From positions 925,684 to 989,683 of the forward strand of contig NW_004797501.1 of NCBI RefSeq assembly GCF_000002075.1: a DNA stretch of 64,000 nucleotides, given 5' to 3'. The stretch is from Aplysia californica. Its lineage: Eukaryota. Under the pieces are notes generated by a model. That model saw only the letters and a list, made by a program, of their open reading frames with translations, was not told the origin of the DNA and ran no database searches. A program made the position numbers and the translations under genes. Of this stretch, positions 37,317 through 47,997 are shown piece after piece (position 1 is the first letter of the stretch; every line of letters begins with the position of its first letter).

Positions 37317-37445
37317 CTATACCACTTGTTCGCTTGCAGCTGAAGACTTCAAATTACTTGTGTTTACTTTCTCACTTTTGGCACTGATTTCTTGCTGGGA
37401 ACTCAATAACCTCTCCTTCTCCATTTCCACTTTCTTGTCAAGCTC
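37317..37445 (-). CDS. UQCC6: BRAWNIN/C12orf73 (sloth2-like) coding exon 2
   Basis: Strong acceptor tttctttttatcatttcag|gag, phase 0; ELDKKVEMEKERLLSSQQEISAKSEKVNTSNLKSSAASEQVV*. Assigned by splice logic; this C-terminus is poorly conserved. Confidence 0.7.
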   Translation of the reverse strand, partial: ELDKKVEMEKERLLSSQQEISAKSEKVNTSNLKSSAASEQVV

Positions 37446-37487
37446 CTGAAATGATAAAAAGAAAGAAATAAACTTGTAAATGTACTA

Positions 37488-39411
37488 CAGTAGTCTCTGC
37501 CTATACCGCGCCATACAAAAGCACGCTCCGCACAAATGCAAGCTTTCATCATATGGCTGGGGTTTTTTGCTATATATAATTTAGACGTACATGTACTAAC
37601 GCAGGGTCCCTCCTTCTAAATGCAAGCTTCAATCCGCGAAACAAGCCAACTGGTAAAGCTTGACAAGAGGAAAGTTTTGCTACAACCTGCACAGCTTGCA
37701 TAAGACATGTCTAGACAACCGGATATTTGGTGAGACTTCCCCTCCAGCAGAACAAAGAGAGTGGACAGCGTTTTCATATCCAATTTCCAAGGACACATAA
37801 GTCTAGGATTGGTCGGGTGATATGTTAGGGATGGGGGGGACTGAAATGTCTTTTAATTGATCATTCGAAATGCGTCTGTGAGAGAAAGTTTCTAACTGGA
37901 GTTCGGTGACTGCATGAATAATGTTTATTTAGACCTATGATGCACAACATGTGTAAATACGGTAGAACTGAGAGCGCAAGATAGGCCTAGTCAAGTAATC
38001 GGCTGCGCTCAAAGAACTTATATGTACTGTTTCAACAAATCACAAGAGAAAAGTCTCTTGGAATGTCTGATTCTGATGTCATTCTTGCATTTACCGAGTT
38101 GCAATAAGATGACAGGCAGTCGAGAGTCGTTTTTCCCCGACTATAAGTTTCCTTTTAAATAATCCCGACATTTTTATACTGCATTCAGTAAGTGAATCTG
38201 TCTTTCTGCTCCCCCCCCCCCTCCACTCATTCAATGCCTATGTATTCACAATTCATAACCACAGTCGAGGAATCTTTCACAAAACAGTCACGTGTCGTCA
38301 CATTACAGTAGTCTCCGTCTAAGATCCCACCACTTATGGTCCCGGTTCCTCTTAGATCCCAACATTTTGGAAAAACAGAATTTTTACTATATAAAAGTCA
38401 CCCCTAAGATCCCGCTCTGATCCGCACTGAAGGAGCTACATTCGACTAAGATCCCGCTTTTCAGGTCATATTTTAGTTGTTTTTCTTCTTTTTTTTAAAG
38501 AAAAAAAAGAGAATCCTTGTCGCGCTCAGCTGATAAATCAAGTAGTAAAAATGTGCAATCATTGTACGGTCCGTTGCATCTCGAACAATCCACTCTCAGG
38601 ATTGCGATCACACCTCTGTTGTAAATGTCGATCAGCGGTTACAATGTTTGCTCCAGACGGGACCGCACCAAGGTGTGAACTCGTCGACATGTTGCTTTCC
38701 CAATCACCAGAGCCATCCACCTGATCTTATATCACACACTAGGTGGGGAAGGCCTACAAGTAAGCATCAGACTGCATTCCATCAAAGTGTGAATTCTCGT
38801 GGACGCTTACTCTTCCCCTAACATCAGTTTTCCGCTCGAACTTCCTAGACAGACAGGAGCCCATACTCGTGGACTGTCCCATTGCCTTAGCGTTATGCCG
38901 GTGTGGTCACAACACAACGATTTCTGATGCACCATGACATGGGCAGTGAACTCCGTCAGAGACGGAAAGCAATAAATTTTTGGTGGGGGGCATTGCCTGA
39001 AGCCAACTGGTTAACACTTGGCACAGCCCCCCCACCCCCCATCAAAAAAAAGAGGAAAAACTGACTTCTGAAAAGAACTTTTAGTGTCCAGGAGTCACGT
39101 CAGTTCATTTTAAAGTAAGGGAAGATCATTGTACAGATTTTGGGCCTGACCATGAGTCACTGTGGATTCTTCCCCCCGGCTATTCAGCTAAGATCCCGGT
39201 TCGCCTAAGATCCTTGCTCCCGAGCACTGGGGTCTTAGGCAGAGACTACTGTATTGGCCAAAATAACCCCCACCACCCAAGGGAGGCCACTAAAATATCA
39301 AGGAAATGAGATGATTGTGTCCCTTCACCCCCTTTGCTTAGGCTCATGAAAACACACACTCCATACGCCAGTGAGTCCTCCTGAGCTCCATGTGTTAAAC
39401 AGAGACTACTG
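37488..39411. mobile_element. Tigger-like MITE containing a nested MITE at 38306-39251
   Basis: Outer ends cagtagtctctg...cagagactactg with TA flanks; inner ends cagtagtctccgtctaagatccc...gggtcttaggcagagactactg with TA flanks. Confidence 0.7.
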
Positions 39412-46158: not shown

Positions 46159-47843
46159 GTAGCATCTTTATAGACGATCAAATTAATTTACCTTTGTGTT
46201 TTAGCATAATTTTTTATCTTTGTTTTGGTCAATTTGATCGTCCACACCGATAGACAGTATTCAGAAAGAGACAGAGAGAGAGAGGGGAGGAGTAAATCTT
46301 GCGAGAACTTCCGGGCAAAACAAAATGGCGACCCGCGTAGTTCGGTTCGATTCGAAAAGTGAAATAGCCATAGAGCATCTTTGTAGACGATCAAATTAGC
46401 TTACTTTTGTGCTATCATAACGTAATTTTTTCTTGGAAGTGCCTATTTGCAACACCGCGTTGTGATTAGCGTCAGTGCAAAATAAAACGCAGCGTTGCGA
46501 TTAGCGCCAGTGCTAAATAAAACGGCGTGTCGCCGTGTGTAAAATATCAAGCTTAATCTGCACTTCGTTATCGGAAGTTCTGATGGCCGAAGTGACAGTG
46601 CGTCTGCGCTTGAAGTCAAACCATTATTTTTTTTAGCGTGGGTTCGATCCCGGTCCTGGACGGGTTTTTTCATGTTTTTTTTGTTGTTGTTGTCCTCCTC
46701 TCGACTGACCAACAAATTGTTCCACATTATATCTTGTTGCTTTGTAGTTTTTTTATATGTAGTGATGATGCATGCACATTCTGGTTTTGTCCCCAAGAGG
46801 AGCTCTGTACAAAGTTGGCCTAAGTATAGCCTATACTTTTCCTTTTACCAATTTAGGCCTGGTTAAAGTTCAGTAGTGGCTTTCCTTGGTCTGTGAGTCT
46901 AATTTTTTAAAATAAAAAAAAAATTTAGGCTCAGGAGAAGGAAAAAAAAAACACCTTTCAGGACTGGGACAGTCTGGGATTCGATGCCACGCTTGGAAGC
47001 ACTGAACATTAGACTTAGAGAACGTAGACAGTAGACAGCTTGAAACGTTCTCTAGGCCTAACTTAAAGTTCGAGTTTGCATCGTCTTGTTATTGTCCAAG
47101 CGTCTTTCGACTTAAACTTGCTCAAACTCTAACTCAGATGATTATCTTATGAGAGATGAACAAGACGTCTACTTTTGTGCAAACAATGTCAGAAACAATT
47201 GTCTAGATCTAGATCTAGATTTTTCTAGATCTAGATTCTAGATCTACCCGATATTGATCGGAATATAAGACAACGTCATGAAAAAAGGAGTCAAATCCTA
47301 GGAGGTTTATCAAAAAACTAAGAAAATTTCCACAATTCAGGCAGAACTACAATATTATCATGTAGAAACGATGGCTACTACATCTAGATCTAGACTCTAG
47401 TACTGGCGTTTCAAATAGCACAGGAGCTATTCAGAACGCGGCGTTGCAAATAGCACGGGAGCTATTCCTGAATTCAGAACGCGGCGTTGCAAATAGCAAT
47501 TTGCAAGCGCTTGCCTTTTTTCTTAGCTTTTATATTTTATTGTCAATTTGATCATCCATGCCGATATAGACAGTAGTAGTCCGAAATTAGGAAAAACAGG
47601 TCTTGTTTCACATCGTCGTGTATAGTATAGCCAACGCTGGCAAGTCTCACCCGGGGCCGGGGTGACAGGTCGATCGTATTTTTACTCTCACCCCGGGTGA
47701 GGATAACCACTTCTAGTTTGCACATTTTAAGGCCCAGTTCAAAGTTTTGAAGGTCTGAGTCGGGGATTAGAGTAGACTTTGGGAATTTAACGTGCTAAAG
47801 TATAAGATCACCAACAATGGAATTTCTCGAGATGAAAACTTAC

Positions 47844-47997
47844 AAAAATTTACTCCCAGCGGTCTCCATTTGATCATCGCAAATTCAACTGTTGCGCCCA
47901 TAACAAAAAACAAAGGCATGAATCGGTAAACACCAAATAAACGTTTCCCTGGCCACTTTTGGATCACCAATTGGAGAAAGGGTATTTTTTTAGCCAT
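47844..47997 (-). CDS. UQCC5: SMIM4 (sloth1-like) complex III assembly peptide, coding exon 1
   Basis: MAKKIPFLQLVIQKWPGKRLFGVYRFMPLFFVMGATVEFAMIKWRPLGVNF-t|gtaagt; matches the family signature PGK..FG.YRF.P.FF..G...E..MIK. Confidence 0.93.

What the first reader, a model, noticed from the sequence alone, without database searches (positions are those of the whole stretch)
37317..47997. Bicistronic SMIM4 (UQCC5) + BRAWNIN (UQCC6) locus: two complex III micropeptides apparently sharing one exon
Seen: the SMIM4 stop (41507-41509) and the BRAWNIN ATG (41339) lie 167 nt apart on the - strand within what reads as one exon (41574-41232), bounded by a good acceptor and donor, and the spacer has no ATG. 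Known: Drosophila sloth1/sloth2 are a bicistronic pair of these same families, whereas the human genes are separate. Inference: this mollusc keeps the operon-like arrangement although both ORFs are split by multi-kb, transposon-filled introns. SMIM4 has three internal in-frame ATGs, which argues for re-initiation rather than simple leaky scanning. Gene predictors would probably miss one or both ORFs.
Basis: partly seen in the sequence, partly recalled or inferred. Interest (0 to 1): 0.85.

Follow-up and report, generated by a model that had tools for sequence, protein, structure and literature searches.

The report
Two-gene SMIM4–BRAWNIN message in a sea slug
Two tiny mitochondrial complex III assembly proteins (SMIM4/UQCC5 and BRAWNIN/UQCC6) sit one behind the other and share a middle exon in this mollusc; this is real and holds in six other molluscs checked, but the arrangement was already described in flies, lamprey, sea squirt and a choanoflagellate.

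Summary
On the minus strand, SMIM4 runs 47997-47844 and continues at 41574 to its stop at 41509-41507. A 167-nt spacer without ATG follows. BRAWNIN starts at 41339, leaves the same exon at 41232 and ends at 37445-37317. Both exon peptides pass Pfam's cut-offs (PF15114, E 3.9e-19; PF14990, E 1.7e-14). Each family occurs only once in this 927-Mb genome. The exact 78-aa spliced BRAWNIN product is in a public protein set.

The same-exon layout recurs in five other molluscs: Bradybaena, Elysia, Bulinus, Patella and Octopus, with spacers of 28-357 nt. In a bivalve the two ORFs lie 3.2 kb apart. Four assembled contigs carry both complete ORFs; three lack an intron present in the compared gastropod genome. 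Across ten spacers ATG is depleted (10 seen, 31 expected; 0 of 2000 shuffles), but not in 3'UTR and intron controls. This fits ribosomes scanning the spacer.

The one-transcript claim here therefore rests on relatives and on 20 runs that hold every sampled word of the exon.

Bosch et al. 2022 (eLife) already showed this architecture, including the same three-exon layout in lamprey. This is a new member of a known kind, of modest interest. Whether translation uses re-initiation or leaky scanning remains open.

The parts
47844..47997 (-). SMIM4/UQCC5 coding exon 1: ATG at 47997, 51 codons plus the first base of a split Tyr codon, donor GTAAGT at 47843
   Evidence: PF15114 E 3.9e-19. 75-76% identical to the Elysia and Bradybaena SMIM4 proteins.
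41575..47843 (-). Intron 1 (6269 nt, phase 1), holding dispersed repeats such as an element of about 1.3 kb at roughly 44710-46000
   Evidence: Splice sites read. Repeat copies at 85-92% identity on many contigs. The intron position is shared with fly and lamprey and with other molluscs.
41232..41574 (-). Shared middle exon (343 nt): end of SMIM4, the spacer, and the start of BRAWNIN
   Evidence: Acceptor ttccag and donor GTAAGC. All 28 sampled 31-mers of this exon are held by 20 sequencing runs from 6 named studies.
41507..41574 (-). SMIM4 C-terminal coding part (last two bases of the split Tyr codon, 21 codons, TAG stop)
   Evidence: The YDVY-KKEA motif aligns with mollusc SMIM4 proteins (A1).
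41340..41506 (-). Intercistronic spacer: 167 nt, no ATG, 36% G+C, stops in all frames, AATAAA at 41438
   Evidence: Not conserved in sequence (A3). Not more structured than shuffles (z +0.9).
41232..41339 (-). BRAWNIN/UQCC6 coding part 1 (36 codons, ATG at 41339 with A at -3)
   Evidence: PF14990 E 1.7e-14. 100% identical to the first 36 residues of P0003.
37446..41231 (-). Intron 2 (3786 nt, phase 0), holding a dispersed repeat of at least 700 nt at about 40397-41100
37317..37445 (-). BRAWNIN coding part 2 (42 codons plus TAG)
   Evidence: Identical to residues 37-78 of P0003.
37081..37316 (-). Putative 3'UTR, up to the first polyadenylation-type signal ATTAAA at 37086
   Evidence: Inferred only; no reads were laid.
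48003..48059 (-). Possible upstream ORF (18 codons, context gccATGG) ending 5 nt before the SMIM4 ATG; it belongs to the unit only if the 5'UTR reaches this far
   Evidence: Read. The transcription start is unknown.

Best explanation
This is the mollusc version of the ancient SMIM4(UQCC5)-BRAWNIN(UQCC6) tandem unit, known in Drosophila as sloth1-sloth2.

Most likely one promoter upstream of 47997 drives one pre-mRNA. Splicing removes two repeat-laden introns and leaves a three-exon mRNA with two cistrons. SMIM4 (73 codons) ends inside the middle exon. BRAWNIN (78 codons) starts 167 nt later in the same exon.

Ribosomes reach the BRAWNIN AUG by scanning the unstructured, ATG-free spacer. Re-initiation after terminating on SMIM4, or on the short out-of-frame ORFs, is more likely than leaky scanning, though some leaky scanning may contribute.

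The pay-off is coupled production of two small inner-membrane proteins that act together in complex III (cytochrome b) assembly.

Shown here: gene identity, exon structure, single-copy status, conservation of the layout, spliced two-ORF contigs in relatives, and ATG depletion of spacers.

Inferred: the single transcript in this species, the translation route, and the function.
For: Identity: Pfam hits. The exact spliced 78-aa BRAWNIN product is P0003. The locus is single-copy.

Conserved same-exon layout, with spacer lengths: Bradybaena 169 nt, Elysia chlorotica 357 nt, Bulinus 52 nt, Octopus 132 nt, Patella 28 nt.

Contigs carrying both complete, uninterrupted ORFs: L003 (spacer 300 nt), L004 (52 nt), L005 (10 nt), L012 (331 nt). 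blastn shows that three of them join exon 1 to exon 2 with the intron absent: about 1.2 kb (L003 against the Elysia chlorotica genome), 5.4 kb (L004 against Bulinus) and 6.3 kb (L012 against Bradybaena). L005 had no genome to compare.

ATG depletion: ten mollusc-type spacers hold 10 ATG against 31 expected, with 0 of 2000 shuffles as low. Nine 3'UTR and intron controls hold 40 against 45 expected, P 0.19.

Upstream ORFs: every ORF that starts upstream in the window ends at least 134 nt before the BRAWNIN ATG. The same holds in L004, L005 and L012, and for all but one in L003.

Start contexts: the SMIM4 ATG has A at -3 and G at +4, and an internal ATG at 47901 also has a strong context. This disfavours leaky scanning.

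This species: 20 runs hold all sampled words of the exon. Most have contig sets of 32-118 Mb against a 927-Mb genome, which the tool guesses to be RNA.

Precedent: Bosch et al. 2022, PMC9681215.
Against: None of the runs is on record as RNA.

Assembled contigs cannot exclude additional BRAWNIN-only transcripts.

Re-initiation after an ORF of 73 codons is usually inefficient in eukaryotes (general knowledge).

An AATAAA at 41438 in the spacer could end SMIM4-only messages.

ATG depletion is not uniform: L003 holds 5 against 5.8 expected.

In a bivalve the two ORFs are 3.2 kb apart, with an acceptor-like site in front of BRAWNIN.

Annotators of four mollusc genomes modelled two separate genes.
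Confidence: 0.7

Rival explanations
1. These are two adjacent genes rather than one message. BRAWNIN protein comes mainly from its own transcript, started in intron 1 or the spacer or carrying another first exon. SMIM4 messages end at a polyadenylation site in the spacer. The spanning contigs would then be read-through or merged overlapping transcripts.
For: Separate gene models exist in Elysia, Bradybaena, Bulinus and Octopus. AATAAA lies at 41438 in the spacer. The bivalve ORFs are 3.2 kb apart. Jawed vertebrates keep the genes on different chromosomes. There is no direct transcript evidence for this species.
Against: Spacers of 10, 28 and 52 nt leave no room for a promoter. The BRAWNIN start lies inside an exon bounded by a strong acceptor 235 nt upstream. 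Four independent contigs span both ORFs, three with an intron removed. The spacer is ATG-depleted from the SMIM4 stop onward. Spacer sequence is not conserved, as a promoter would be expected to be.
Confidence: 0.2
2. One bicistronic mRNA is made, but BRAWNIN is translated by leaky scanning, as proposed for Drosophila sloth1/2. Some 43S complexes would skip the SMIM4 AUG and every later AUG.
For: The fly reporter data support this model. ATG depletion of spacers fits any scanning model. SMIM4 start contexts are weaker in some relatives: T at -3 in Bradybaena and C at -3 in L012.
Against: In the window six AUGs must be skipped. They include the SMIM4 start (A at -3, G at +4) and 47901 (G at -3, G at +4). 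Five of seven SMIM4 starts have a purine at -3 and six of seven have G at +4.
Confidence: 0.25
3. The spacer recruits ribosomes internally, in an IRES-like way.
For: The spacer is long and rich in A and T.
Against: The fold is no more stable than shuffles (z +0.9). There is no sequence conservation. Spacer length ranges from 10 to 357 nt among relatives. ATG depletion along the spacer points to scanning.
Confidence: 0.04

Closest known systems
Drosophila sloth1-sloth2 (CG32736-CG42308), Bosch et al. 2022, eLife 11:e82709 (PMC9681215)
   Same: Same two families, same order (SMIM4 first), same strand and one transcript. The phase-1 intron in SMIM4 is at the same position (F|Y).
   Different: The fly spacer is 5 nt against 167 nt here. 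The fly has no intron in the BRAWNIN ORF. Fly sloth1 has a weak start context and leaky scanning was supported by reporters. Here the upstream start context is strong and five more AUGs intervene.
Lamprey (Petromyzon marinus) SMIM4-C12orf73 linked locus, Supplementary file 1 of the same paper
   Same: The three-exon plan is identical: SMIM4 exon 1; a middle exon with the SMIM4 end, a long spacer and the BRAWNIN start; then a phase-0 intron after the proline-containing motif (RPDL in lamprey, NPLK here) and a last exon.
   Different: [quoted passage not shown]
Human SMIM4 (UQCC5, chr 3) and C12orf73/BRAWNIN (UQCC6, chr 12)
   Same: Orthologous proteins, each with one membrane helix, acting in complex III assembly (PMC8719881; PMC9681215).
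   Different: The human genes are unlinked and monocistronic.
uORF-type re-initiation (yeast GCN4, mammalian ATF4; general knowledge)
   Same: A downstream AUG is reached by post-termination scanning. A longer spacer favours re-acquisition of initiator tRNA.
   Different: Those upstream ORFs are a few codons long and regulatory. Here the upstream ORF is a full functional protein of 73 codons.

Membership tests
SMIM4 / UQCC5 (Pfam PF15114, UPF0640) | Profile match above the curated cut-off | tested here: met
   Exon-1 peptide scores 68.8 bits against a cut-off of 27, E 3.9e-19, covering profile positions 6-49 of 67. The own-genome scan gives 69.3 bits.
SMIM4 / UQCC5 (Pfam PF15114, UPF0640) | About 65-80 residues with one hydrophobic helix | tested here: met
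   51 + 1 + 21 = 73 codons, counted exon by exon. Kyte-Doolittle mean is 1.82 over residues 26-42.
SMIM4 / UQCC5 (Pfam PF15114, UPF0640) | Conserved phase-1 intron between the F and Y of the NF|Y motif | tested here: met
   Same position and phase in fly and lamprey and in Bradybaena, Elysia, Patella and Octopus.
SMIM4 / UQCC5 (Pfam PF15114, UPF0640) | Mitochondrial inner-membrane location and a role in cytochrome b / complex III assembly | not testable with these tools
   Known for the human and fly proteins (PMC8719881, PMC9681215). Inferred here from orthology.
BRAWNIN / UQCC6 (Pfam PF14990, DUF4516) | Profile match above the curated cut-off | tested here: met
   36-aa exon peptide scores 53.7 bits against a cut-off of 27, E 1.7e-14, covering profile positions 1-35 of 46.
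BRAWNIN / UQCC6 (Pfam PF14990, DUF4516) | Invariant N-terminal MPAG start and the FAGAQ-VH helix motif | tested here: met
   Alignment A2 has invariant M1 P2 A3 G4 S6 R9 Y10 and M21-Q26, V28, H29.
BRAWNIN / UQCC6 (Pfam PF14990, DUF4516) | The predicted splice gives a real product | tested here: met
   P0003 (78 aa, public protein set) equals the exon 41339-41232 peptide followed by the exon 37445-37320 peptide.
sloth1-sloth2-type bicistronic gene | SMIM4 ORF then BRAWNIN ORF on the same strand, with no exon boundary or other gene between them | tested here: met
   The same holds in five other mollusc genomes.
sloth1-sloth2-type bicistronic gene | One mature transcript spans both ORFs | tested here: inconclusive
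   Met in relatives: spliced contigs L003, L004 and L012, plus L005.
sloth1-sloth2-type bicistronic gene | Both peptides are translated from that transcript | not testable with these tools
   This needs ribosome profiling, reporters or mass spectrometry.
sloth1-sloth2-type bicistronic gene | Weak start context on the upstream ORF (the leaky-scanning model of the fly) | tested here: not met
   The window SMIM4 ATG has A at -3 and G at +4. This lowers 'same translation mechanism as the fly', not 'same gene arrangement'.

The most novel reading that the evidence does not exclude
In molluscs the downstream cistron may be translated chiefly by re-initiation after a complete, functional 73-codon ORF. 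The spacer would act as an ATG-purged, unstructured 'runway' kept clear by selection (10 ATG against 31 expected in ten spacers). That would give a natural animal model for efficient re-initiation after a long ORF without a dedicated RNA element. Together with other candidate two-ORF units noted elsewhere in this genome, it would hint that polycistronic messages for small mitochondrial proteins are commoner in molluscs than annotations show.
Probability: 0.3. Interest if true: 0.55.

Novelty: new member of a known kind. Interest (0 to 1): 0.35.

Why it matters
It extends the SMIM4-BRAWNIN tandem unit to Mollusca (gastropods and a cephalopod, with a looser version in a bivalve). This supports the published view that the linkage is ancestral and was broken in jawed vertebrates.

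It gives a correct gene model for two microproteins that automatic annotation handles unevenly.

The cross-species ATG depletion of the spacer, together with the strong upstream start context, yields a concrete and testable question. How is the second cistron translated when leaky scanning looks unfavourable?

It does not reveal a new kind of system.

Tried and rejected
- **Read laying.** A second call beside them was blocked by the cap, so there are no read-level data. The window file as a whole was the subject of two local BLAST runs, and nothing matched in that stretch.
- **Joined model.** The joined spliced SMIM4 and BRAWNIN models were not searched as joined sequences. Exons were searched by reference only.
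- **Contig look-up for P0003.** Nothing is on record.
- **Second copy or processed retrocopy.** I searched the own genome for one, since a retrocopy would have recorded the mRNA structure. There is none.
- **Conserved element in the spacer.** None was found among gastropods.
- **Stable RNA structure in the spacer.** None was found (z +0.9), so an IRES-like reading was set aside.
- **Trans-splice-type acceptor before the BRAWNIN ATG.** The 30 nt upstream are purine-rich with no pyrimidine tract, so this was set aside.
- **ATG-free spacer as evidence from the window alone.** It is only marginal (P about 0.05) and became meaningful only when pooled over ten loci with controls.
- **Literature on molluscs.** Searches found no paper on the mollusc arrangement.
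Full report
**What is there**

All features lie on the minus strand. An ORF starts at ATG 47997 with context acgaagATGg. It runs 51 codons and one further base to 47844, where a GTAAGT donor follows. After a 6269-nt intron, a pyrimidine-rich acceptor (ttccag) precedes 41574. The split codon reads Tyr, and 21 more codons lead to TAG at 41509-41507.

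The next 167 nt (41506-41340) hold no ATG, have stops in all three frames and are 36% G+C. At 41339 a second ORF starts with context ctgacaATGc. It runs 36 codons to 41232 and meets a GTAAGC donor. After a 3786-nt intron, an acceptor (tttcag) precedes 37445, and 42 codons lead to TAG at 37319-37317.

So is the count of three in-frame internal ATGs in SMIM4. There are also two out-of-frame ATGs, at 47869 and 41574. The first opens a 9-codon ORF that ends across the splice junction. The second opens a 33-codon ORF that ends at 41473.

**Identity**

- The 51-aa exon-1 peptide matches PF15114 (UPF0640, the SMIM4 family) at 68.8 bits, E 3.9e-19.
- The 36-aa peptide matches PF14990 (DUF4516, the BRAWNIN family) at 53.7 bits, E 1.7e-14. 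Both cut-offs are 27 bits.
- The closest SMIM4 proteins are from Elysia chlorotica and Bradybaena similaris, at 75-76% identity.
- A database protein of 78 aa (P0003) equals the two BRAWNIN exon peptides placed end to end. This confirms the second splice.
- In the whole assembly (927,310,431 bases in 4,332 contigs) each family hits only once, in this window. There is no second copy and no retrocopy.

A note by another agent of this scan calls the genome the sea slug Aplysia. That fits the heterobranch affinities. I did not test it.

**Conservation of the layout**

Gene tables and sequences of other molluscs show the same shared exon: acceptor, SMIM4 end, spacer, BRAWNIN start, donor.

| Species | Spacer | Note |
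|---|---|---|
| Bradybaena | 169 nt, no ATG | both genes annotated |
| Elysia chlorotica | 357 nt | both genes annotated |
| Bulinus truncatus | 52 nt | both genes annotated |
| Octopus vulgaris | 132 nt, no ATG | both genes annotated |
| Patella caerulea | 28 nt | BRAWNIN not annotated |

In the bivalve Sinanodonta, an unannotated BRAWNIN start lies 3.2 kb downstream on the same strand, behind an acceptor-like site.

A histone-deacetylase (HDAC11-like) gene lies head-to-head upstream in Elysia, in Bradybaena and in the window, where exons sit at 60811-60999 and 62302-62415 on the plus strand.

**Transcript evidence**

Four assembled contigs carry both complete, uninterrupted ORFs.

| Contig | Source | Spacer |
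|---|---|---|
| L003 | Logan SRR22428377 | 300 nt |
| L004 | Logan SRR16036426 | 52 nt |
| L005 | JGI 3300031121 | 10 nt |
| L012 | JGI 3300057131 | 331 nt |

blastn shows that three of them join exon 1 to exon 2 with the intron absent:

- L003 against the Elysia chlorotica genome, about 1.2 kb removed;
- L004 against the Bulinus genome, about 5.4 kb removed;
- L012 against the Bradybaena genome, about 6.3 kb removed.

L003 and L004 also align through the start of the BRAWNIN ORF, and all four contigs keep a spacer between the two ORFs. These three contigs are therefore spliced bicistronic RNAs of gastropod relatives.

For the window's own species I have only indirect evidence. Twenty runs from six named studies hold all 28 sampled words of the 343-nt exon. 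Most have contig sets of 32-118 Mb, far below the genome size, and the tool guesses them to be RNA. None is on record as RNA.

The cap then blocked a second call. I sent no query with those letters to any search tool afterwards. The whole window file was the subject of two local BLAST runs, with no match in that stretch.

**How the second ORF is reached**

- The spacer is not conserved in sequence among gastropods.
- It folds no better than shuffled versions (z +0.9). This argues against a dedicated RNA element or an IRES.
- Pooled over ten mollusc-type spacers, ATG is strongly depleted: 10 seen, 31 expected from dinucleotide-preserving shuffles, with 0 of 2000 shuffles as low.
- Nine control stretches (3'UTRs and intron ends of the same loci) show no depletion: 40 seen, 45 expected, P 0.19.
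- Almost every ORF that opens upstream ends before the BRAWNIN AUG.

This is the signature of a leader that ribosomes scan.

The SMIM4 start has a strong context in the window (A at -3, G at +4). Among the seven SMIM4 starts compared, five have a purine at -3 and six have G at +4. Five further AUGs follow in the window, one of them in a strong context. Leaky scanning, the model supported for the fly, therefore looks unfavourable here. Re-initiation after termination is the better guess. It is unproven, and re-initiation after 73 codons is normally inefficient (general knowledge). Extra BRAWNIN-only transcripts cannot be excluded.

**Comparison with what is known**

Bosch et al. [quoted passage not shown] They reported the linked architecture in a choanoflagellate, a sea squirt and the lamprey.

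Their Supplementary file 1 shows that the lamprey locus has the same three-exon plan with a shared middle exon and a long spacer. The fly keeps the SMIM4 intron at the same position and phase.

I found no paper on molluscs. The window is therefore a new member of a known kind. The added points are the molluscan distribution, the spliced contigs, the ATG-depletion test and the mismatch with the fly's weak-Kozak model.

**Verdict**

The arrangement and its conservation hold. The single transcript in this species and the re-initiation idea remain inferences.
- Interest is modest (0.35).

Noticed in passing
window 48003-48059 (-): An 18-codon ORF with a strong start context (gccATGG) ends 5 nt before the SMIM4 ATG. 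If the 5'UTR reaches it, it would be a further upstream ORF in the same message.
   Followed up: no
window 60811-60999 and 62302-62415 (+): Exons of an HDAC11-like histone deacetylase lie head-to-head with SMIM4. The same neighbour and orientation occur in Elysia chlorotica (L002) and Bradybaena (L001).
   Followed up: partly
window about 44710-46000 and 40397-41100: Dispersed repeats sit inside the two introns. One is an element of about 1.3 kb at 85-92% identity with 9734 first-look candidates. The other is at least 700 nt at about 84% identity with 3512 candidates. Neither was classified.
   Followed up: partly
window 41438 (-): An AATAAA lies inside the spacer, 69 nt after the SMIM4 stop. 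It could be a site for SMIM4-only polyadenylation, or a chance match in A+T-rich sequence.
   Followed up: no
L010:10777-10884 (Patella caerulea) and L009:14274-14381 (Sinanodonta woodiana): BRAWNIN first exons are present but not annotated in these assemblies. In the bivalve the exon lies 3.2 kb after the SMIM4 stop and behind an acceptor-like site, so an intron may have entered the spacer.
   Followed up: partly
P0005 (Plakobranchus ocellatus): A 78-aa BRAWNIN homologue is named 'histone deacetylase 11' in the public record. The name was probably carried over from the neighbouring gene.
   Followed up: no
L004:1-774: The Bulinus-like contig has 774 nt with 16 ATGs ahead of the SMIM4 start and begins with a run of ten A. 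It may be a chimeric assembly or an unusually long leader.
   Followed up: no
L005:666-965: A third ORF of 99 aa with no Pfam hit lies downstream of BRAWNIN on the JGI contig.
   Followed up: no
They lie inside intron 2. I worked beside them.
   Followed up: no
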